Shown here: piece after piece, positions 40,166-55,475 of the stretch | How positions within the stretch are numbered: the first letter of the stretch is position 1 | How the letters are laid out: the number at the start of each line of letters is the position of its first letter | IMG/VR virus record: IMGVR_UViG_3300045971_000577 | Span: 186,001 to 250,000 of that record | Reading direction: 5' to 3' (one strand) | DNA length: 64,000 bases | Made by a program: the position numbers and the translations under genes | The notes under the pieces: model-generated | Databases searched by the model: none | Told to the model about the DNA's origin: nothing | Seen by the model: only the letters and a program-made list of their open reading frames with translations

Positions 40166-40287
40166 GAAGTTTTGCTCAGCAAAAAGCCGCTCTTGGAGCG
40201 GCTTTTTCATGTATGGCGTCTCTAAGAAGAATCCAACTTCTATCTTGACCTTAGGAGTGTCTTATTCTATGCATTGAACTATAGAGA

Positions 40288-40512
40288 CTATCTTTCTGCT
40301 TTTTCAAGTCTATCGTAGTAATCAGGAAACTCGTTCAAATGATCTAATGCAATTTCTTTAGCAAGGTTGAGATTACCTGTATGTTCTTGTTCAACCTTGA
40401 TACCCTTACGAAGCTGATTTGCGAGATCGTTATACGGAACTCCGTGCTTCTTTAGCACTTCCTGGAAGGAAGGGGTTTTCTTACCCATCATGTCGAATTC
40501 GTATAATCTCAT
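40288..40512 (-). CDS. DUF5661-like small protein (MRLYEF leader)
   Basis: GIKVEQEHT....AKEIALDHL.EFPDYYDRL. Confidence 0.75.
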   Translation of the reverse strand: MRLYEFDMMGKKTPSFQEVLKKHGVPYNDLANQLRKGIKVEQEHTGNLNLAKEIALDHLNEFPDYYDRLEKAER

Positions 40513-40520
40513 TTTGTCCC

Positions 40521-40610
40521 TGGAGGATGATTAAAGAATCGAACTTTCCCCGGCTCATCACCGAGGGGCAAACTTTCGAAATTTGTTAGCGCCCAGCGCA
40601 CCTATCATCC
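40521..40610 (-). tRNA. tRNA-Ser(CGA), atypical class II
   Basis: GGATGAT/ATCATCC acceptor, U73, CCA; loop TT-CGA-AA; long variable arm; 5-bp D stem; 4-bp T stem. Confidence 0.75.
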
Positions 40611-46120: not shown

Positions 46121-46212
46121 TGGTAGGAGCGTAGGGAATCGGACCCTATCGAGAACACCTATCTAGTGCTAAGAGGCTTATAAGACCTCCCTGACTGCCA
46201 AGTCTCGCTCCC
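46121..46212 (-). tRNA. Class-II-type tRNA with UAU anticodon (Ile-like)
   Basis: GGGAGCG/CGCTCCT acceptor, A73, CCA; loop CT-TAT-AA; 24-nt variable region; T-loop TCCGATT. Confidence 0.7.
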
Positions 46213-47659: not shown

Positions 47660-48487
47660 TTAGTTGATTGCACAAACTTCAGCCTTTGCAGCCTTAGCAC
47701 TCTTTGTGGCAGAGGGCCAGATCTTGTCGGCGTATTTGACGGATTTTGGCACGGGAAATACGATACCAGTCTCTTTTTGCACTTGAGCAAGGCTAGATAA
47801 GAACTTGGTCAAACTACCAGATGCAGCTTCGTGGTTAAATCTGAATACCATTGCTTCGTTTGTTTGCGTGTCGATGATAATCTTGTAGAAGCCGTTAGGC
47901 ACAGTTACCAAGTTTGCACCCATTGTCTTATCTTGCTTCTGGTTATAAATCGGCCCAGCATAGATAAGCAAGGTGTGCGAACGGTTGATTGCCCAAGCAC
48001 GAGTTTGGTCTTCGAGCTTTTTCCAAATGCCACGGTTGAATTGCGGCAGTTGTGGAGTCATGTTGCTTAGGATAAAGCTTTCTCTTGCTGCTTCTGGATT
48101 CCAGCTCATATCTGCACTGTTGGCAATGTGGCCTGTATCGTATCCGGACTTGGCATAATCCTTTAGTTCGGCACGCTTATCAGCTGGCAACGAACGGTCG
48201 GACTTGAACACAGACATTCTCTTTTCGCAGCCAGTTGCATTTTCCGGCTTCAATGTGTAAGACACCCACTGCGGAATCTTTGCCTTGTTATCGTGCTCGA
48301 GCAGATATGCTTTACGACAGATAACGGCTGTGTCATGTTTCTTGACAACAGGCTGACCATACGGAATTTGGGCAACACATTGTTCGATTGGAAGTGGCGG
48401 ATCCTGTGACTGGGCTGCTGCCGACACAGAGAATGCGAATAGAATTGAATATGCGATTTGTTTGATCATAAAAATGCCTATGTGCAA
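47660..48487 (-). CDS. Secreted DNA/RNA non-specific endonuclease (NucA/EndoG family)
   Basis: Signal peptide; GYDTGHIA, ESFILSNMTPQLPQFNRGIW. Confidence 0.9.
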   Translation of the reverse strand: MHIGIFMIKQIAYSILFAFSVSAAAQSQDPPLPIEQCVAQIPYGQPVVKKHDTAVICRKAYLLEHDNKAKIPQWVSYTLKPENATGCEKRMSVFKSDRSLPADKRAELKDYAKSGYDTGHIANSADMSWNPEAARESFILSNMTPQLPQFNRGIWKKLEDQTRAWAINRSHTLLIYAGPIYNQKQDKTMGANLVTVPNGFYKIIIDTQTNEAMVFRFNHEAASGSLTKFLSSLAQVQKETGIVFPVPKSVKYADKIWPSATKSAKAAKAEVCAIN

Positions 48488-48622: not shown

Positions 48623-49018
48623 CTAGTATAGCGGCAAACCTAATGATTTGCGACCTCTACCTTTGTTAGCTGCACCTAAAAACTCTGTCTGATAATGGCA
48701 GTTTGGGCATAGTAGTCTTAGATTTGTTGGATGATCATTACTCGAATCACCATTTGTGTGATCTACGTGCAATGTGAGTGGCTTACCTAACCATTCTGTA
48801 ACACCACATTCAGGTATTTCACATTTGTATCCACGAACTTCAGCAATATAAGTTCTTGCTGTAGGACGATCTATTCGTGTGAGCTTTCCAGCCCAAAAAT
48901 CTTCTCGATGTTGTTTAGCTTTCGATTGTGAAGCACATTTCACACTACAATACTTGTTGTTACTTTGATAACTCCATTTACATTCTTTATTACAAAATCC
49001 ACAGGTATATGTTTTCAT
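48623..49018 (-). CDS. HNH endonuclease (Zn-ribbon type)
   Basis: KYCSVKC; LHVDHTNGD..N...NLRLLCPNCH. Confidence 0.88.
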   Translation of the reverse strand: MKTYTCGFCNKECKWSYQSNNKYCSVKCASQSKAKQHREDFWAGKLTRIDRPTARTYIAEVRGYKCEIPECGVTEWLGKPLTLHVDHTNGDSSNDHPTNLRLLCPNCHYQTEFLGAANKGRGRKSLGLPLY

Positions 49019-49068
49019 GGTAGAGTTCCCCTTATGGTATTTATCACTCTACCTTGCAAAAAGTCATA

Positions 49069-49092
49069 GATAAAGGGCCGAAGCCCCTTATC
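49069..49092 (-). terminator. Hairpin after the Ro60-like gene
   Basis: Plus-strand AAGGG-CCGAAG-CCCCTT inverted repeat just past the stop. Confidence 0.6.
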
Positions 49093-49105
49093 GTCTTACG
49101 ACCTC

Positions 49106-50527
49106 TTAGAAGTCGTACTTTTGAACCATGACGGTTTCAAGCATGATGCTGATTGGAGTCATTTCCTTACCACCCAGCACGCTCTTCACAATGCTTGGCG
49201 AGAAGCCAGATACCAACGCAGCACCGACCTTGTTGTAGGTCACAGGGCTGTTTCCGGCGCGACCGTTCAAGTTCCAGAACACAACTTGCGGGACCTTGTA
49301 GCCAGCCGCAGCGTATTCCTTCTCAATGAACTCCATCGCAGAAACGCTAACCGCAGCGCCACCGCCATAACGGCCACCAGTTGTGCCTGCTGTTACACAA
49401 GCATCAAACTCCATGTCCGAAAGGATAAGCACCTTGGTAGGCATTTCCTTCTGATCAACCTTACCCTTCACGGCCGCACCAAGAATCAGCTTGAATACTG
49501 CTGCAAGGTCGGTGTTCATTGCCCAATCCGAACGGTTCATCGCGTCGTAACGCTGACCCAAGTCACCTGTCAACTTAACCATCGATGGCGAGCCACTGAA
49601 GGTTACAAAGGTGTCCTTGAATACACCGCCCATACGCTCGGAAACGTACAAACCCAACGACACTGCAACATCCAGAGCAGTTACGCTACCAGACACTTCA
49701 GAACTCATCGAACCCGATACGTCAACGACCGGCATGATGTTCTCGTCCGAACCTTCCAAGTAGTTAGGCAGAGCCTTCCACTGTTCGATCGAAACGGTAC
49801 GATCACCGGACTTCAACGAACGGATAACGTCGTATGGGTACGACACGCTCGCGTTGATCTTGGTTTCACCAGCCACCAGTGCAGCCTTGTAAGCACCGTA
49901 TCCCGAAGGATCGTGCTTCAAGAATGCCTTCTGGTAACGACCAGCAGCAACCGAAGGAACGTGAGGGTATGTGATACCTGTCCACTCCTGCGCACACATC
50001 TTCTGCTCGACAGTGTTGGACAAGCCAACTACGAGCTTACGATATTCCTTGGGAGTTAGACGCAAGTAGGAGCGAATCTTGTTCGCTTCCGCGCCCTGAC
50101 GAGGCATCCACTTTGCGCACAAACCGTCCTTCACGTCGTTCAACGCAAAAGCGATCATACGCAGAGCTTCACGCTCCAATGTGGTACCAAAAGTCAGCAA
50201 AACGTCGTCCCAGCGACCCAGTTCCGGAACCTTCACCAACAGGCGCGAAGCCAATACGGGTTCAGTCTTCAGAACATAGGAGAACAACTTACGGAATGTT
50301 TCACGCTCACCAGCACCACCACGTGCATCACGTGCCCACTGAAGGACGCGGATTGCGACTTCGCTGTCTTCTGCCAAGGCAGCAGCGAAAGTAGAAGTGA
50401 TGTCCTTACCACGGCTTGCGCCAGCAAGGAAGAAGAGGTCCACGTTCTTGTTCAACGAGGATGCGTTTGTAACTGCGCCGTTAGTTGTGGTTGCGCTCGA
50501 GTTTACTGCTTCAAATAGTGTTGTCAT
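49106..50527 (-). CDS. DUF2828-type TROVE-like + vWA protein (Ro60-like)
   Basis: TTNGA, WARD.RGGAGER, GRWDD, AKWMPR; vWA MIDAS VVDVSGSM; VLILSDMEFD, VVFWNL, VSGFSP; start MTTLF at 50527. Confidence 0.85.
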   Translation of the reverse strand: MTTLFEAVNSSATTTNGAVTNASSLNKNVDLFFLAGASRGKDITSTFAAALAEDSEVAIRVLQWARDARGGAGERETFRKLFSYVLKTEPVLASRLLVKVPELGRWDDVLLTFGTTLEREALRMIAFALNDVKDGLCAKWMPRQGAEANKIRSYLRLTPKEYRKLVVGLSNTVEQKMCAQEWTGITYPHVPSVAAGRYQKAFLKHDPSGYGAYKAALVAGETKINASVSYPYDVIRSLKSGDRTVSIEQWKALPNYLEGSDENIMPVVDVSGSMSSEVSGSVTALDVAVSLGLYVSERMGGVFKDTFVTFSGSPSMVKLTGDLGQRYDAMNRSDWAMNTDLAAVFKLILGAAVKGKVDQKEMPTKVLILSDMEFDACVTAGTTGGRYGGGAAVSVSAMEFIEKEYAAAGYKVPQVVFWNLNGRAGNSPVTYNKVGAALVSGFSPSIVKSVLGGKEMTPISIMLETVMVQKYDF

Positions 50528-50544
50528 AGTGTTTTCCTTTATCA

Positions 50545-50656
50545 GAATCATTTTTTATACTGTTGCCTATACCAATTCGGCTACCTTGCTGTTACCAACA
50601 AGGGTGGGACTCGAACCCACAACTCACAGTTGCTTAGTTAATTGCGGAACTGATTC
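50545..50656 (-). ncRNA. Y-RNA-like unit A (YrlA-like circularly permuted tRNA domain)
   Basis: GAATCA/TGATTC closing stem + CCGCAA; T-arm GTGGG-TTCGAGT-CCCAC; loop-closed 7-bp acceptor; then D-arm. Confidence 0.75.
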
Positions 50657-50670
50657 ATTAGAATGAAATC

Positions 50671-50779
50671 AAGATTATTGTTTTACGTTGACCTGTGTGC
50701 TGCCGTTACACTAAGCTACTCCGGAGTCGAACCGGTCCCCTGGTTTGGATTGTAAGTTTTTGGTTGCTGTAATAATCTT
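50671..50779 (-). ncRNA. Y-RNA-like unit B (permuted tRNA-like, reduced acceptor)
   Basis: AAGATTATT/AATAATCTT stem + ACAGCAA; CCGG-TTCGACT-CCGG T-arm precedes the GTG..CAC D-arm. Confidence 0.7.
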
Positions 50780-50793
50780 TTAGAAATAAATCA

Positions 50794-50899
50794 GATTCGG
50801 CGTGGCGAGTTTTTGCTTTCCCCTCCAGAAAGGTTCTTAGTTAATACCCTTTCGGGTGGTTGCTAATATGCTATATTTTAGTTGTTGCTGAAACGAATC
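50794..50899 (-). ncRNA. Y-RNA-like unit C (no tRNA domain)
   Basis: GATTCG/CGAATC stem + TTTCAGCAA; internal ACCC-GAAA-GGGT hairpin. Confidence 0.6.
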
Positions 50900-50928
50900 G
50901 TTAGTAATGTTGTTGCAAGTCTCGTAGT

Positions 50929-51312
50929 TTACAAGTTCTTTAGCGACATGTCAATGACTTCGGTTGTAAAGTGCGAAGTAGGACTACCTACACCCGGATC
51001 AACTAAAATATCGACACCGATCATAATATTTTTACTGTCTTCGTCCGATTGGAGATCAAACATTAGATAATATCCACCCGTGCCAGTAAATGAAAGCCAT
51101 GCATCTGGCATTCTGACTTTTGTATTACGTTCCTTAATGATGGTGTTTGCATTTGCACATGCATATCGTACCATATCGGTATGAATCAAATACAATACAT
51201 CATGCACCGATATCGGTGCAGACGGCCATTTCCTGACTGCCGGGTTATTATCCCAAATATAGGAGGCTGCTGCATGAAGTGATACAAGATTGTAGCAGAG
51301 TTCAATTTTCAT
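50929..51312 (-). CDS. Hypothetical protein within the RNA array
   Basis: Start MKIELC at 51312. Confidence 0.6.
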   Translation of the reverse strand: MKIELCYNLVSLHAAASYIWDNNPAVRKWPSAPISVHDVLYLIHTDMVRYACANANTIIKERNTKVRMPDAWLSFTGTGGYYLMFDLQSDEDSKNIMIGVDILVDPGVGSPTSHFTTEVIDMSLKNL

Positions 51313-51335
51313 TATGATGTGGTTTAGATAAGACA

Positions 51336-51556
51336 GCGTGGTGTAAGGGACCTGTAGAGTCAATATCTTACCGTAGCTCGATATGTTATATACATGCTAT
51401 CGGGCCTTACCCCGAGATCGAACCTTTTACATCGTCCGAGGATGTTTGTTAGTTCTTATACAGGGTTCATTGCCTAATCATACAAAAAGGCTCCGCCTGT
51501 GTCGAGTGCTAACTACAATACCGCCTTGCAGCGATGATTATTTGCTGTATCCACGC
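51336..51556 (-). ncRNA. Y-RNA-like unit D (~220 nt)
   Basis: GCGTGG/CCACGC stem + ATACAGCAA; internal ACATC/GATGT hairpin and GGTTCGA. Confidence 0.55.
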
Positions 51557-51578
51557 CTTAAAATATACTACAAGCTGT

Positions 51579-51607
51579 ATTATGCAGTAGTTCTATTTAC
51601 CTGTCAA
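51579..51607 (-). promoter_or_regulatory. Sigma70-type promoter heading the Y-RNA/Ro60-like operon
   Basis: TTGACA-17-CATAAT about 22 nt upstream of unit D. Confidence 0.7.
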
Positions 51608-51624
51608 CCTGCGGCTTGCCGGTT

Positions 51625-52416
51625 TTATAGGTCAGAATTAGTAGATTTTTGGTAGGCAAGCTCTTTATTGATAAAATCAACTGCTCTTTTCATCAATCGC
51701 TTATAATCTCGTGAACGTTCTTTTTCCGGAAAGAGGTCAGATATCTTATGAAGAGCCAGTGCTCTCCTCAATGTAGTCATTGCATGTGTTTGCATCGAAT
51801 CAGCAGGCATATCTTTCATCGCAGCCCTCTCAATTGCAAGTGTAACCGAATGAAGGACTTGGGCGAACCGTGCGTTGATTTCTGCAGGTTCGGCACGATA
51901 CGCTAAATTACCCATATACGGATCATCTATGCGGTGTTGTTTCTTTCTCGGAGTTCTGTATGTGTCCGAACTACTTGCCTTTCCACTGGATTTCAAATCA
52001 TCCAGTGCGTGCCTAAGCTCGTGTACGATGGTCGATTTGATTGTGTTCGATGTTATAAAATCTGCATTTAGATAAATTGCCGGAACAGTATTATCCCATA
52101 ATCCGAGTGTATGTCTAATATTCTCTGGATCATCGTCGACATAGTTCTTTCCTGCCTGTTCGGCTGCTGCCTTTCTCGACGCCTTGATTTTTGCACGCAA
52201 GGCATCGCCCTGCAGCAGGACTATGGAAATATCTTCTATTCCCTCAAGCGGCGTGGTGCAGAAGTCGTCTATCTTACCCACGTCTAATGGTTCGGCGTTA
52301 TCTGGATCGATATAATCAGCATACTTCTGTATGTGCTTATAAACGGCGGAAGACAGGGAAATAATCGCCCTGTCTTCTTCTGTAGTTTCGATAATGAATA
52401 GTTCTAGTAGCTTCAT
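51625..52416 (-). CDS. HExxH metallopeptidase-like late protein (MKLLELF leader)
   Basis: IVHELRHALD; AEINARFAQ; GATAAATA at 52435-52442. Confidence 0.65.
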   Translation of the reverse strand: MKLLELFIIETTEEDRAIISLSSAVYKHIQKYADYIDPDNAEPLDVGKIDDFCTTPLEGIEDISIVLLQGDALRAKIKASRKAAAEQAGKNYVDDDPENIRHTLGLWDNTVPAIYLNADFITSNTIKSTIVHELRHALDDLKSSGKASSSDTYRTPRKKQHRIDDPYMGNLAYRAEPAEINARFAQVLHSVTLAIERAAMKDMPADSMQTHAMTTLRRALALHKISDLFPEKERSRDYKRLMKRAVDFINKELAYQKSTNSDL

Positions 52417-52447
52417 AGCGTATCCTGGATACGCTATTTATCTTATT

Positions 52448-52810
52448 TCACGGTACCGCATGACCTCTCAAGATATCGAACTCAGACGGTCTGAGACCAG
52501 CCGCGATCATAATGTCCATACGCTCTTGGTCGGTTTTGGTTTTCCATTCCATAATGTTGTCAATGCCACCATATGCTTTACGTGGTACGTGATGCATAAA
52601 CCATTTTGATATATCACGGAAAGATGCAACAGTCAACGCCGGATGGGCGCGGCAGGATGCATTCATGAAGTTGTTGCACAACACCGCCATTCCGAAACTA
52701 CCGGGATCAATGCCATAGGCAAGGTAATTCCAGAATGATTCTTTCATTTCTTCGGGCACATTTGGAAAATGCTCAAATGTGGCGTCGAACTGTGGGTGCA
52801 TTGTTCTCAT
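52448..52810 (-). CDS. Hypothetical protein
   Basis: AGGA SD; ORF. Confidence 0.7.
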   Translation of the reverse strand: MRTMHPQFDATFEHFPNVPEEMKESFWNYLAYGIDPGSFGMAVLCNNFMNASCRAHPALTVASFRDISKWFMHHVPRKAYGGIDNIMEWKTKTDQERMDIMIAAGLRPSEFDILRGHAVP

Positions 52811-52861: not shown

Positions 52862-53680
52862 ATGTCAATACCCTACACATATCTAATCGGCTGGTCAGAC
52901 CATAATCTATGGTACTATGGAGTACGATATGCAAAGACATGCAATCCAAATGATTTATGGGTAACATATTTTACCAGTTCTAAGAAAGTAAGAGAATATA
53001 GAGAACAGTTCGGAGAACCAAATATAAGGCAAATAAGAAAAGTATTTTCAACTACAAAATCTGCCAAAGTGTGGGAAGATAAGGTATTAGCAAGATTGAA
53101 AGTTTGTAATAATCCAAAATGGATAAACCAATCAAATAACTACTCATTTGCATCAGTCGATAAATCGTGGAACGATGGATTAACAAAAAACACCGATAAC
53201 AGATTACAGAATATATCAAATAAAATTTCTGCTAAACGAAAAGAAAAATACTGGAAATCCGGTGATTACATTCGATCAACCGATCAAGTCATTAAAAATC
53301 GTATGTTTCAAATAACAAGAAATAATCCAAATTTTATATTTGAAACATACGATCTATTTGCCGAATATTGTAATAAAGAATATGTGTCAGGTAAGTCTAT
53401 AACAGATATATCAAAATCGGTAAATGTCGGTATGGTTACAGTAAAACTTGCCATTGAACATCAGACCGGTGATATGCCGATAATCGATCAATCATGGTCA
53501 AAACTTAAGAAGAACAACCCGGAATTACCATTCGACGATTATAAAGATTTATGCGACTATCTATACTCGGAAATATTAATAAAAGGTCGAAAAAGATTTC
53601 ATCTTCGGAAAGAACTTAATATTTCCGAAGATGCTATAAGAAGAGCTATTCGTGTCTCAGAAGCCACTCGTTGTTTATGA
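52862..53680 (+). CDS. GIY-YIG (Seg-like) homing endonuclease
   Basis: PYTYLIGW..HNLWYYGVRY...YFTSSK; AT-rich; overlaps the ligase 3' end convergently. Confidence 0.8.
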   Translation: MSIPYTYLIGWSDHNLWYYGVRYAKTCNPNDLWVTYFTSSKKVREYREQFGEPNIRQIRKVFSTTKSAKVWEDKVLARLKVCNNPKWINQSNNYSFASVDKSWNDGLTKNTDNRLQNISNKISAKRKEKYWKSGDYIRSTDQVIKNRMFQITRNNPNFIFETYDLFAEYCNKEYVSGKSITDISKSVNVGMVTVKLAIEHQTGDMPIIDQSWSKLKKNNPELPFDDYKDLCDYLYSEILIKGRKRFHLRKELNISEDAIRRAIRVSEATRCL

Positions 53681-54722
53681 CCTTAAATGAAAATTTACCG
53701 TCTATTCTCTTAAAGACCAATCCTTCTCTAATCAGCGAGTTGATAGATGGTCCTTTAGCATAGTTCAATAATCCATCGACACCGTAAATTCTTAAATCTT
53801 CTAAAGATTCAGACATAGCAATAACCGGTACATGTTCGACCATATTTTTATCGAGGCCTAATTCGTGTAATCTGTATACTACTTCATGCCGCTGATGCGG
53901 AGCAAGATAACATGCATTATCAATATCATAAATGTCAAATATGTGCAATTTATGCGATGTAAAGCCCTCTTTGTTACCCTGTATACCGGGCCCTTGCAAC
54001 TCGCCCTGTACAGCGAAATTTTCGCCTAATTCCCGCAAAGCGTCACGCAAGCCTGAGTCAATAAACATGAGCACAAGGCTATTAAACGCATTGCTGTCAT
54101 CAGTTTTCAGTTCCCAGTTTCTGCCGCACACGCCTTCAAAGCCGCTACGGAAGAAACCAGTAAACGAAGTACCATCCACTTTCATGGTAATCTCGTAACG
54201 AGAATCTTCATTCTCGACGAAAATATCATGCACAATGTTTTGGCAACGTTCCTGATCTGTCCTCTGAATGAAGCTAGGGAAGTTTCCACGAATCTGCCCA
54301 GCAAGTTCTGTAGGAACAGGAGGTTCGTATTTCTGCACACCAAGCAGGTCAGTTACATCATCACCCTCGTGAAGAGGACAAGCATGTTCGGCATTGAAGA
54401 ATGTATAGGACCATTCTGTTGCAAGTGTGTCCGAAATAGGAATCAGCAAGCCCTGCGAAACTTGGCCACGCAGTTTTACTGTTTTCAGTCTGAAACCTTC
54501 TTGCTCACCCATTCTCTTGAATGAGCTTTTACGCAGGAATTCAAACTCTTCACGGATAGGCAAGAAACTGTCAATTTCAAAGTAGACGCAAAGATCGCCT
54601 ACAGCGAATTCACCTTTCTTGACAACAACTTTCCAGCCGTCAACAGTTGCTACCTCGATAGCGTCTGCTTCAGGAATAGGGTTCAGTTCTAGAATTTTTC
54701 TGATTGTTGCTAGGTGTCTCAT
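53646..54722 (-). CDS. RNA ligase (DRB0094/Rnl2-like family)
   Basis: LATIRKI..LNPIPEADAIE, VYFEIDSFLP, KLRGQVSQGL, TMKVDGTS (KxDG), QGELQGPGIQGN, REGLVFK, SFKVINN. Confidence 0.9.
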   Translation of the reverse strand: MRHLATIRKILELNPIPEADAIEVATVDGWKVVVKKGEFAVGDLCVYFEIDSFLPIREEFEFLRKSSFKRMGEQEGFRLKTVKLRGQVSQGLLIPISDTLATEWSYTFFNAEHACPLHEGDDVTDLLGVQKYEPPVPTELAGQIRGNFPSFIQRTDQERCQNIVHDIFVENEDSRYEITMKVDGTSFTGFFRSGFEGVCGRNWELKTDDSNAFNSLVLMFIDSGLRDALRELGENFAVQGELQGPGIQGNKEGFTSHKLHIFDIYDIDNACYLAPHQRHEVVYRLHELGLDKNMVEHVPVIAMSESLEDLRIYGVDGLLNYAKGPSINSLIREGLVFKRIDGKFSFKVINNEWLLRHE

Positions 54723-54735
54723 TACGTGACTCATT

Positions 54736-55223: not shown

Positions 55224-55475
55224 GGCGGTGTCGGTTTAAGCAGGATGATCGTAAATGGTTATTTTATTGTCTGGTCGATATACTGAATTTACCCCGACCA
55301 TATCACTAATCGCTAGTGCTCGATTCTACTCTTGTGTCTGCTGTAGACCGCGTATCGGCTTCTGCCGTATATCTATTCCGTCGGTGTGCGATATTTCTAC
55401 CGCATGTGCCTTACGAGCCACCTTCTATAGCTTTGAGCGTATTATTGGATTGCTGTAATCATCCTAAAAATGTAT

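What the first reader, a model, noticed from the sequence alone, without database searches (positions are those of the whole stretch)
50545..50779. Two circularly permuted tRNA mimics (units A and B) inside the array
Unit A reads 5'->3': ACTGT, GAGTT, T-arm GTGGG-TTCGAGT-CCCAC, a 7-bp acceptor CCTTGTT/AGCAAGG closed by a GGTAAC loop, TA, D-arm GCC-GAATTGGTATA-GGC, A, ACAGT. This is a tRNA with the T-arm before the D-arm, a sealed acceptor end, and the anticodon stem opened into the closing stem. Unit B has the same order (CCGG-TTCGACT-CCGG, then GTG-TAACGGCAG-CAC), but its acceptor is reduced to AG-TAG-CT. Established: YrlA Y RNAs have this permuted layout. Inference: uncharged elbow mimics could act as decoys for host anticodon nucleases, tRNA sensors or modification enzymes. 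A has a Leu-type D-arm and B a different one, which suggests separate captures of tRNA genes.
Basis: partly seen in the sequence, partly recalled or inferred. Interest (0 to 1): 0.8.

Follow-up and report, generated by a model that had tools for sequence, protein, structure and literature searches.

The report
Phage Y-like RNAs with tRNA elbows
The two permuted tRNA look-alikes are real: they are the variable heads of two small RNAs that share a conserved stem and lie just upstream of a phage gene for a Ro60-like ring protein, an apparently undescribed variant of the known Ro60/Y-RNA particle.

Summary
Units A (50545-50656) and B (50673-50777), on the minus strand, each have a T-arm followed by a D-arm, closed by an anticodon-like stem. 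A also has a sealed acceptor hairpin.

Each unit sits inside a conserved outer "handle": AAAG-stem-nnC(A/C)GCAA ... stem'-CUGA. The gene 18 nt downstream (49106-50527) has a predicted Ro60 fold, although Pfam calls it DUF2828/DUF7788, not TROVE.

A covariance model built from 18 such units found 87 matches in 438 kb of related phage loci, all on the gene's strand. All four helices covary, U8 and A14 are invariant, and the 15-48 Levitt pair covaries.

The window holds five handle-bearing units (E, D, C, B, A). The same unit occurs next to the homologous gene in Felix O1, Bas63, Citrobacter phage Ci1 and mycobacteriophage Rumpelstiltskin. A preprint reports that the Bas63 homologue (gp130) counters the Ppl defence system.

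Best reading: these are Y-RNA-like partners of a divergent phage Ro60. They are not members of Rfam YrlA (27.8 bits against a threshold of 69; the GNCGAA motif is absent). RNA-protein binding and the function of the tRNA-like heads are inferred, not shown. The decoy idea remains untested.

The parts
50542..50659 (-). Unit A, a Y-like RNA of about 112 nt. Handle GAATCA 50656-50651 pairs with TGATTC 50550-50545. Motif CCGCAA 50647-50642. Closing stem ACTGT/ACAGT. T-arm 50620-50604. Acceptor hairpin 50603-50584 sealed by a GUAA tetraloop. U8-A9. D-arm 50581-50565.
   Evidence: Sequence; MFE fold; Rfam YrlA partial match, 27.8 bits; family model R1, 71.9 bits; covariation across the family.
50669..50781 (-). 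Unit B, a Y-like RNA of about 105 nt. Handle GATTATT 50777-50771 pairs with AATAATC 50679-50673. Motif ACAGCAA 50770-50764. Closing stem ACCAG/CAGGT with an A/A mismatch. T-arm 50735-50721. No acceptor stem (7-nt linker AGTAGCT). D-arm 50711-50697.
   Evidence: Sequence; R1, 83.3 bits. The same acceptor-less design occurs in L004, L006, L007, L008, L011, L012 and L020.
50791..50902 (-). Unit C. Same handle (GATTCG 50899-50894 pairs with CGAATC 50799-50794; CAGCAA 50890-50885) around a non-tRNA module containing GAACCUUUCUGGAGGGGAAAGCAAAAACUCGCC.
   Evidence: Descriptor scan; R1 matches through the handle, 22.5 bits, E 0.004; the module is conserved in L002, L005-L008, L019 and L021; no Rfam family.
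51336..51556 (-). Unit D. Handle GCGTGG/CCACGC with ACAGCAA around a 200-nt module with conserved blocks GGUAAGGC and GUCCCUUACA.
   Evidence: aligned with L005, L011, L016, L019, L020; no Rfam match.
55243..55464 (-). Unit E. Handle GGATGATT/GATCATCC with ACAGCAA around a 200-nt module. A terminator-like hairpin follows at 55233-55205.
   Evidence: aligned with L015, L019, L021; no Rfam match.
49106..50527 (-). Gene for a Ro60-like protein of 473 aa (Pfam DUF2828 + DUF7788; PHROG 850 'RNA-binding protein'). The Shine-Dalgarno sequence AAGGA 50539-50535 lies directly after the 3' strand of unit A's handle.
   Evidence: Pfam; PHROGs; AlphaFold2 model, pLDDT 79; the top 10 Foldseek PDB matches are all full-length Ro60/TROVE structures; invariant MIDAS residues D269, S271, S273, T339, D371.
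50926..50954 (-). Promoter-like site TTGACA-17-TAAACT about 25 nt upstream of unit C. It is the probable start of a C-B-A-gene transcript.
   Evidence: Consensus scan only. A TTGACA...TAAACT site lies at the same place in L007, L008, L011 and L018. Not evidence of function.
49069..49092 (-). Terminator-like hairpin after the Ro60-like gene.

Best explanation
Units A and B are the variable heads of two tandem Y-RNA-like noncoding RNAs. Each RNA has a common handle made by pairing its 5' and 3' ends: AAAG, then a 6-9 bp stem of free sequence, then nnC(A/C)GCAA on the 5' side, and the complementary strand followed by CUGA on the 3' side. The handle carries a module that folds like the elbow of a tRNA.

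Inferred steps:
1. The handle is the binding site for the Ro60-like ring protein encoded 18 nt downstream.
2. Units C, B and A and the gene are transcribed together.
3. The tRNA-like head presents a tRNA elbow to a protein that recognises tRNAs. Unit A adds a sealed acceptor stem. The effect would be either to tether that protein to the ring or to occupy it.
4. Because the last handle abuts the ribosome-binding site, the protein probably also represses its own translation.
5. By analogy with the 43%-identical Bas63 gp130, the particle probably serves phage counter-defence.

Shown here: the RNA structure and its conservation, its strand-specific linkage to the gene across distant phages, and the predicted fold of the protein.
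For: RNA structure:
- 29 units aligned to model R1 are 91.7% paired, against 63.7% in shuffles and at most 42.5% when the partners are slid. The covariation score is 0.69 against 0.19.
- Per helix: handle 98.3% paired, T-arm 96.6%, D-arm 94.5%, closing stem 76.3%.
- U8 and A14 are present in 28 of 28 units. The Levitt pair 15-48 switches between A-U (13) and G-C (6).
- Acceptor hairpins differ in sequence but all pair, and most end in GNRA or UUCG tetraloops.

Linkage to the gene:
- All 87 R1 matches at E <= 0.1 in 438 kb lie on the gene's strand.
- A strict handle descriptor gives 68 hits upstream on the gene strand, 1 on the opposite strand and 0 in shuffled sequence.
- The last handle ends 13-28 nt before the start codon in many loci.

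Protein:
- The Foldseek top 10 are all full-length Ro60 structures, E 1.6e-9 to 4e-5, TM 0.43-0.60. The next matches cover only the vWA domain.
- A profile search weakly hits the phiLo TROVE protein.

Reach:
- The same unit lies next to the homologous gene in Rumpelstiltskin, Felix O1a, Ci1 and Bas63 at 46.7-49.7 bits.

Precedent:
- YrlA RNAs lie beside Ro60 in bacteria and phages (PMC4201824).
- Thermus phage phiLo Ro60 binds two upstream Y-like RNAs (PMC12135203).
- Bas63 gp130 is described as Ro60-like and as countering Ppl (PMC11482910). It is 43% identical to the window protein.
Against: - No binding, transcription or processing data exist for any of these RNAs.
- The handle motif C(A/C)GCAA is not the GNCGAA/CGAA motif that Ro60 proteins are reported to contact. 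The handle-protein contact therefore rests on co-occurrence only.
- About a third of the related loci show no unit within 3 kb, and Listeria phage LP-124 shows none. The partnership may not be obligatory, or the motif may have diverged.
- The alignment used for the pair counts was fitted to the model.
- Single-sequence folding is not exceptional for unit B (z -0.08) and only modest for unit A (z -1.90).
- The promoter scan found no more sites than the shuffles did.
Confidence: 0.62

Rival explanations
1. The units are free-standing tRNA decoys. They would act without the Ro60-like protein, soaking up host enzymes or defence nucleases that recognise the tRNA elbow. The handle would only stabilise the RNA or mark its processing sites.
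For: - tRNA tertiary positions are kept.
- Modules in other loci carry anticodon stem-loops with the sequence UAAUCA, which AriB of PARIS cleaves in tRNA-Lys and tRNA-Thr.
- The phage carries many tRNAs and an RNA ligase nearby.
Against: - It does not explain why the invariant handle motif travels with this one protein family from actinobacterial to enterobacterial phages.
- It does not explain why non-tRNA modules (C, D, E) use the same handle.
- It does not explain why the last handle sits on the gene's ribosome-binding site.
- A and B have no anticodon loop, so they cannot bait nucleases that read the anticodon.
Confidence: 0.17
2. The units are cis-acting parts of the mRNA leader. They would be an autoregulatory operator for the protein plus tRNA-like punctuation that RNase P or RNase Z cuts to process the transcript. 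They would have no function in trans.
For: - The last handle lies 13-28 nt from the start codon with the Shine-Dalgarno sequence between them. Many loci have only a minimal handle hairpin in the 5' UTR.
- M. smegmatis YrlA, which has a 7-bp acceptor stem, is cut by RNase P (PMC4201824). Unit A has a 7-8 bp acceptor stem.
Against: - In Felix O1, Bas63, Ci1, Rumpelstiltskin and several metagenomic loci the units lie downstream of the gene, up to about 1.5 kb from its end (about 1 kb in Felix O1 and Bas63), or stand alone (unit E).
- Up to six units occur in a row in L032: five found by the descriptor plus L032:1722-1850 found by R1.
- Acceptor-less elbows such as unit B are poor RNase P substrates.
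- Autoregulation is compatible with the main explanation and is not an alternative to it.
Confidence: 0.15
3. The units are decayed tRNA genes, or the junction of two adjacent tRNA genes (the T-arm of one followed by the D-arm of the next), with no function of their own.
For: - They lie in a tRNA-rich region.
- The Rfam tRNA model gives a weak chimeric match, 17.7 bits, joining B's D-arm to A's T-arm.
- Model R1 does give one such false positive, at a tRNA-Leu/tRNA-Gln junction in Bas63.
Against: - No anticodon arm or outer acceptor halves flank either unit.
- The acceptor strands pair with each other and are capped by a tetraloop.
- The stem that joins the 5' side of the T-arm to the 3' side of the D-arm covaries.
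- The units are conserved with compensatory changes across loci whose proteins are only 31-84% identical to the window protein.
Confidence: 0.03

Closest known systems
YrlA Y RNAs of bacteria and mycobacteriophages (Rfam RF02553; Chen et al. 2014, PMC4201824)
   Same: - The tRNA-like domain has the order variable loop, T-arm, acceptor-like stem-loop, D-arm.
- U8, A14 and T-loop nucleotides are conserved, and the Levitt pair covaries.
- The 5' and 3' ends pair in a stem.
- The RNA is encoded on the same strand, next to a gene for a Ro60-fold protein, often in several copies.
   Different: - The score is far below the family threshold (27.8 against 69 bits), and only the tRNA-like part aligns.
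- The GNCGAAN0-1G motif is replaced by C(A/C)GCAA.
- The partner protein is DUF2828/DUF7788, not a Pfam TROVE protein.
- Some units lack the acceptor entirely (unit B).
- The same handle also carries non-tRNA modules.
Thermus phage phiLo Ro60 with Yrl1/Yrl2 (Hu et al. 2025, PMC12135203; PDB 9kop, 9l5y)
   Same: - A phage-encoded Ro60-fold protein with two Y-like RNAs just upstream of its gene.
- It is the closest structural match to the model here (E 1.6e-9).
   Different: - Sequence identity is 17-18% in the structural alignment.
- The phiLo RNAs are described as stem-bulge-stem with a CGAA motif.
- The reported partner is host PNPase. No partner is known here.
Bas63 gp130 (PhageMaP preprint, PMC11482910)
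   Same: - It is a homologue of the window protein (43% identity over the full length).
- It lies at the head of a tRNA array.
- It is reported to be Ro60-like and to counter the Ppl defence system.
- The authors guessed that some neighbouring tRNA genes are Y RNAs.
   Different: - The preprint defines no RNA.
- The unit found here in Bas63 (L087:16780-16909) is not one of the annotated tRNAs. It lies where the record has two small opposite-strand ORFs.
Circularly permuted tRNA genes of the red alga Cyanidioschyzon merolae (from my own knowledge; not checked in a paper here)
   Same: - The 3' half (T-arm and acceptor 3' strand) precedes the 5' half (acceptor 5' strand and D-arm).
- Some relatives (L032, L048, L080) even encode A-CCA after the acceptor 3' strand.
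   Different: - There is no anticodon arm. The break is filled by a protein-associated handle.
- Nothing suggests that the units mature into a decoding tRNA.

Membership tests
YrlA (Rfam RF02553) | Scores at or above the curated gathering threshold of the family model (69 bits). | tested here: not met
   Unit A scores 27.8 bits over model positions 23-85 of 114. Unit B is not reported at E <= 10.
YrlA (Rfam RF02553) | tRNA-like domain ordered T-arm, acceptor-like stem-loop, D-arm, with conserved tRNA tertiary nucleotides. | tested here: met
   U8 and A14 are present in 28 of 28 units, and the Levitt pair covaries. Unit B lacks the acceptor stem-loop.
YrlA (Rfam RF02553) | GNCGAAN0-1G motif near the 5' end, the proposed Ro60 contact (PMC4201824). 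| tested here: not met
   The 5' strand carries CCGCAA (unit A) or CAGCAA (unit B). The family consensus is C(A/C)GCA(A/U).
YrlA (Rfam RF02553) | Encoded within 4 kb of, and on the same strand as, a TROVE-domain Ro60 orthologue. | tested here: inconclusive
   The adjacent gene on the same strand has a predicted Ro60 fold. Pfam assigns DUF2828/DUF7788 and reports no TROVE match at E <= 0.01.
Y RNA in the broad sense (partner of Ro60) | About 80-130 nt, with the 5' and 3' ends paired in a stem and a variable internal module. | tested here: met
   Units A, B and C are 105-112 nt with a covarying terminal stem. The true RNA ends are unknown.
Y RNA in the broad sense (partner of Ro60) | Physically bound by the Ro60 protein. 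| not testable with these tools
   Only co-location and co-conservation are shown.
Ro60 / TROVE protein family | Ring of HEAT-like repeats closed by a vWA domain with a MIDAS site. | tested here: met
   AlphaFold2 model with pLDDT 79 and pTM 0.75. Full-length Foldseek matches to ten Ro60/TROVE chains from six entries (9kop, 9l5y, 2nvo, 1yvr, 1yvp, 2i91, 9nep, 9nf8). Invariant D269-x-S271-x-S273, T339 and D371. This is a prediction, not a solved structure.
Ro60 / TROVE protein family | Recognised by the Pfam TROVE sequence model. | tested here: not met
   No TROVE hit at E <= 0.01. Only a weak profile hit to the phiLo TROVE protein in the MIDAS region, E 0.0019.
Functional or permuted tRNA gene | Complete cloverleaf including an anticodon arm. 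| tested here: not met
   There is no anticodon loop. ARAGORN and the Rfam tRNA model at threshold make no call.

The most novel reading that the evidence does not exclude
A widespread phage ribonucleoprotein platform. A Ro60-like ring protein, found in 710 GenBank phage records from Felix O1 to jumbo phages, would hold a set of small RNAs by one universal handle. It would display interchangeable tRNA parts as baits that sense, sponge or block host defence systems, Ppl and tRNA-cleaving nucleases among them. The parts seen are sealed elbows, acceptor-less elbows, open acceptors with an encoded CCA, and bare anticodon stem-loops that match the PARIS AriB cleavage site.
Probability: 0.25. Interest if true: 0.9.

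Novelty: new variant of a known kind. Interest (0 to 1): 0.72.

Why it matters
Ro60 with Y RNA is a conserved but poorly understood particle, and what the tRNA-like domain of bacterial Y RNAs does is an open question.

This family offers a tractable route to that question:
- The protein is common in cultured model phages such as Felix O1, the BASEL phage Bas63, KVP40-like Vibrio phages, Listeria, Staphylococcus and Mycobacterium phages.
- One homologue already has a reported counter-defence phenotype.
- The RNAs identified here give defined sequences to delete, mutate and pull down.

The variety of modules on one handle suggests the RNA head sets the target. That can be tested directly.

The result also corrects annotation. 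These units are currently unannotated, called pseudo-tRNAs, or covered by small spurious ORFs.

Tried and rejected
- Nucleotide search of 49000-52500 against GenBank phages found nothing. The window matches only its own IMG/VR contig, of 369 kb.
- Sequence search of the protein against PDB found only repeat-protein noise. A profile search gave a weak TROVE hit. Structure prediction was needed to see the Ro60 fold.
- My first two handle descriptors were too loose and gave as many hits on the control strand as on the gene strand. A relaxed version was also noisy, 293 hits against 88. Only the strict descriptor and the covariance model are used as evidence.
- I considered a split tRNA: B's D-arm plus A's T-arm around a 67-nt insert, which the Rfam tRNA model scores at 17.7 bits. 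I rejected it because the would-be acceptor strands, AGTAGCT and CCTTGTT, do not pair.
- I considered a box C/D or kink-turn reading of the AAAG/CUGA base of the handle. There is no UGAUGA box, so I did not pursue it.
- Full-text searches for DUF2828, for Ro-like phage proteins and for YrlA in phages found no description of these RNAs. The supplementary tables of Chen et al. 2014 and the 2020 Ro60 review were not held, so I could not check whether any phage of this family was in their list.

Full report
**Observation.**
Unit A reads ACTGT, GAGTT, then the T-arm GTGGG/TTCGAGT/CCCAC. The acceptor strands CCTTGTT and AGCAAGG follow, then TA, the D-arm GCC/GAATTGGTATA/GGC, A, and ACAGT. Unit B reads CCGG/TTCGACT/CCGG, AGTAGCT, TA, the D-arm GTGT/AACGGCA/GCAC, A, and CAGGT. 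Folding unit A alone returns this structure, with the acceptor drawn as 8 bp closed by a GUAA tetraloop. ARAGORN finds 14 tRNAs in the window and Rfam finds 12 at threshold, but neither calls one here. At a relaxed threshold Rfam's YrlA model aligns unit A over its tRNA-like part only (27.8 bits, E 0.0016, threshold 69). The tRNA model gives a weak chimera of B's D-arm and A's T-arm.

The ORF that starts 18 nt after unit A (49106-50527, minus strand, 473 aa) matches Pfam DUF2828 and DUF7788, with a weak vWA signal and no TROVE match. PHROGs places it in family 850, 'RNA-binding protein'. Sequence search of PDB was uninformative. A profile of 32 homologues touched the Thermus phage phiLo TROVE protein only weakly. 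An AlphaFold2 model from that alignment has pLDDT 79 and pTM 0.75. Its ten best Foldseek matches in PDB are all full-length Ro60 structures: phiLo, Deinococcus Rsr, Xenopus and human. They have E 1.6e-9 to 4e-5 and TM 0.43-0.60. Everything below them matches only the vWA domain. The MIDAS residues D269, S271, S273, T339 and D371 are invariant in the 32 homologues. The protein is therefore a divergent Ro60-fold protein. This rests on a predicted structure.

I compared the upstream regions of 80 related viral loci (L001 is the window's own contig, 369 kb). Every unit is enclosed by a further stem with conserved flanks. On the 5' side this is (A/U)(A/U)A-G, a 6-9 bp stem, then 0-3 nt and (A/C)C(A/C)GCA(A/U). 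On the 3' side it is the complementary strand ending in C, followed by U(U)G(A/U). The stem sequence changes freely while the pairing is kept, for example GATTCG/CGAATC, GGCTAA/TTAGCC, GGTTCCT/AGGAACC and GGGCAA/TTGCCC. A strict descriptor of this handle hits 68 times in the 1.2 kb upstream of the gene on the gene's strand. It hits once on the opposite strand and never in shuffled sequence. It also gives 30 hits downstream on the gene's strand and none opposite.

The window holds five such units on the minus strand:
- E, 55464-55243
- D, 51556-51336
- C, 50899-50794
- B, 50777-50673
- A, 50656-50545

C, D and E carry modules that are not tRNA-like. These modules are conserved in other loci and match no Rfam family.

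**Comparative test of the tRNA-like units.**
I aligned 18 units, wrote a structure with four helices (handle, closing stem, T-arm, D-arm) and built covariance model R1. In 438 kb from 55 sources, searched on both strands, R1 found 87 matches at E <= 0.1, all on the gene's strand. In the 64-kb window it found only unit B (83.3 bits) and unit A (71.9 bits).

On the 29 best matches, the pair counts are as follows:
- 91.7% of cells pair, against 63.7% in shuffles and at most 42.5% when the partners are slid.
- The covariation score is 0.69 against 0.19.
- 16 of 20 pairs show changes on both sides.
- Per helix, the handle is 98.3% paired, the T-arm 96.6%, the D-arm 94.5% and the closing stem 76.3%. 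The closing stem has a recurrent central mismatch.

The alignment was fitted to the model, which favours the structure, but the margin is large. U8 and A14 are present in 28 of 28 units, and the T-loop is nearly always UUCGANU. The tertiary Levitt pair 15-48 switches between A-U (13 units) and G-C (6 units). Chen et al. used the same argument for YrlA.

Acceptor regions fall into three designs:
- Hairpins of varied sequence sealed by GNRA or UUCG tetraloops: window A, L005, L009, L013, L014, L022, L076.
- No acceptor at all: window B, L004, L006-L008, L011, L012, L020.
- An open type with A-CCA encoded after the 3' strand and a spacer before the 5' strand: L032, L048, L080.

**Reach.**
The protein family is found in 710 GenBank phage records. 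These include Felix O1-like, KVP40-like, Aeromonas, Listeria, Staphylococcus, Enterococcus and Campylobacter phages. They also include Mycobacterium phages, where it is annotated 'Ro-like RNA binding protein'. R1 finds one unit downstream of the gene in each of these cultured phages:
- Mycobacteriophage Rumpelstiltskin, 48.1 bits
- Felix O1a, 47.8 bits
- Citrobacter phage Ci1, 46.7 bits, overlapping a feature annotated as a pseudo-tRNA
- The BASEL phage Bas63, 49.7 bits at L087:16780-16909. This lies inside the tRNA array, where the record has two small opposite-strand ORFs.

ACAGCAA is kept in all of them, although their proteins are only 31-43% identical to the window protein. Listeria phage LP-124 shows no unit, and about a third of the metagenomic loci show none within 3 kb.

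**Comparison with what is known.**
- YrlA RNAs next to TROVE-type Ro60 genes are described in 254 bacteria and 22 phages. They have the same T / acceptor-like / D order and a GNCGAAN0-1G motif taken to be the Ro60 contact (PMC4201824).
- Thermus phage phiLo Ro60 binds two upstream Y-like RNAs through a CGAA motif and engages host PNPase (PMC12135203).
- TROVE proteins with a tRNA-like partner are mentioned for jumbo phages (PMC7824862).
- A preprint reports that Bas63 gp130 resembles Ro60 in structure and counters the Ppl defence system. It guesses that some adjacent tRNA genes are Y RNAs (PMC11482910). gp130 is 43% identical to the window protein over its full length.

I found no description of the handle, of these units, or of any RNA partner for the DUF2828-type protein. 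Two sources that could have settled this were not held.

**Membership.**
The units work like YrlA, but they fail two of its defining tests: the family score and the GNCGAA motif. Their partner protein is not a sequence-recognisable TROVE protein. I file them as a new variant of the Ro60/Y-RNA kind, not as YrlA.

**Mechanism.**
Shown:
- The RNA structures are conserved and covary.
- They are linked, strand-specifically, to a gene for a protein with a predicted Ro60 fold across distant phages.
- The last handle sits 13-28 nt before the start codon, with the Shine-Dalgarno sequence between them.

Inferred:
- The handle binds the protein.
- The tRNA-like head engages a protein that recognises tRNAs.
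- The protein represses its own mRNA through the last handle.
- The particle acts in counter-defence, as reported for Bas63 gp130.

A promoter-like TTGACA-17-TAAACT lies before unit C, and a terminator-like hairpin lies after the gene. These fit a C-B-A-gene transcript, but they are consensus matches only.

**Rivals.**
- Protein-independent decoys. This does not explain the shared handle or its fidelity to one protein family.
- A purely cis-acting leader with processing signals. This is contradicted by units that lie downstream of the gene or stand alone.
- tRNA debris or tandem tRNA junctions. This is contradicted by the covariation and by the self-paired, capped acceptor.

The two D-arm types differ, but each is old and shared among distant phages. 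Neither unit resembles the window's own tRNAs beyond generic 8-mers.

**A lead outside the window.**
In other loci the same handle carries bare anticodon stem-loops. L032:2443-2504 has UUUGA-CUUUUAA-UCAAA (Lys UUU). L078 and L080 have UUUGA-CUUGUAA-UCAAA (Thr UGU). L060 has CCAA-CUGUAAA-UUGG (Tyr GUA). The first two contain U36-A-A-U-C-A41, the site at which the PARIS nuclease AriB cuts E. coli tRNA-Lys and tRNA-Thr (PMC12409363). This fits a bait function for the heads but proves nothing.

Noticed in passing
window 50791-50902 (-), 51336-51556 (-), 55243-55464 (-): Three more RNAs (units C, D, E) carry the same handle around modules that are not tRNA-like. Each module type is conserved in other phage loci and has no Rfam family. 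Unit E is followed by a strong terminator-like hairpin at 55233-55205.
   Followed up: partly
L032:2443-2504, L078:2763-2836, L080:2771-2843, L060:2761-2815, L032:2006-2101: In related loci the handle carries bare anticodon stem-loops (Lys UUU, Thr UGU, Tyr GUA). In one case it carries a whole tRNA body in normal order with the acceptor stem replaced by the handle. The Lys and Thr loops contain UAAUCA, the reported AriB (PARIS) cleavage site.
   Followed up: partly
L032:1526-1655, L032:2119-2253, L048:2490-2629, L080:4529-4665: Some permuted units encode a discriminator A plus CCA right after the acceptor 3' strand, then a 10-16 nt spacer before the 5' strand. This looks as if the acceptor is meant to be opened by tRNA end-processing enzymes. 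Unit A in the window is instead sealed by a GUAA tetraloop.
   Followed up: no
L087:16780-16909 (Bas63, MZ501086), L081:4961-5089 (Felix O1a), L082:4440-4635 (Citrobacter phage Ci1): In cultured phages the unit is unannotated, covered by two small opposite-strand hypothetical ORFs (bas63_0137 and bas63_0138), or called 'tRNA-Pseudo-AAC'. These look like annotation errors.
   Followed up: partly
window 47660-48487 (-), 48623-49018 (-), 53646-54734 (-): Near the Ro60-like gene are a DNA/RNA non-specific endonuclease, a weak sub-threshold HNH endonuclease match and an RNA ligase (PHA02142 OB-fold plus RNA_ligase domain). Listeria phage LP-124 has an RtcB-like ligase near its homologue. The neighbourhood is typical of RNA damage and repair genes.
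   Followed up: no
window 50929-51363 (-): An ORF of up to 144 aa with no Pfam or PHROG match lies between units D and C. Its end overlaps the promoter-like site in front of unit C.
   Followed up: no
window 46121-46212 (-), 40217-40288 (-), 40521-40610 (-): The tRNA callers disagree. ARAGORN calls a 92-nt tRNA-Ile(UAU) and a tRNA-Ser(CGA) that Rfam does not report at threshold. Rfam calls a tRNA at 40217-40288 that ARAGORN misses. Most of the phage tRNA genes encode their CCA end.
   Followed up: no
L087:19602-19731: Model R1 gives a 26.6-bit match at the junction of two adjacent tRNA genes (Leu and Gln) in Bas63. Tandem tRNAs are a source of false positives for any permuted-tRNA model, as Chen et al. 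2014 warned.
   Followed up: yes
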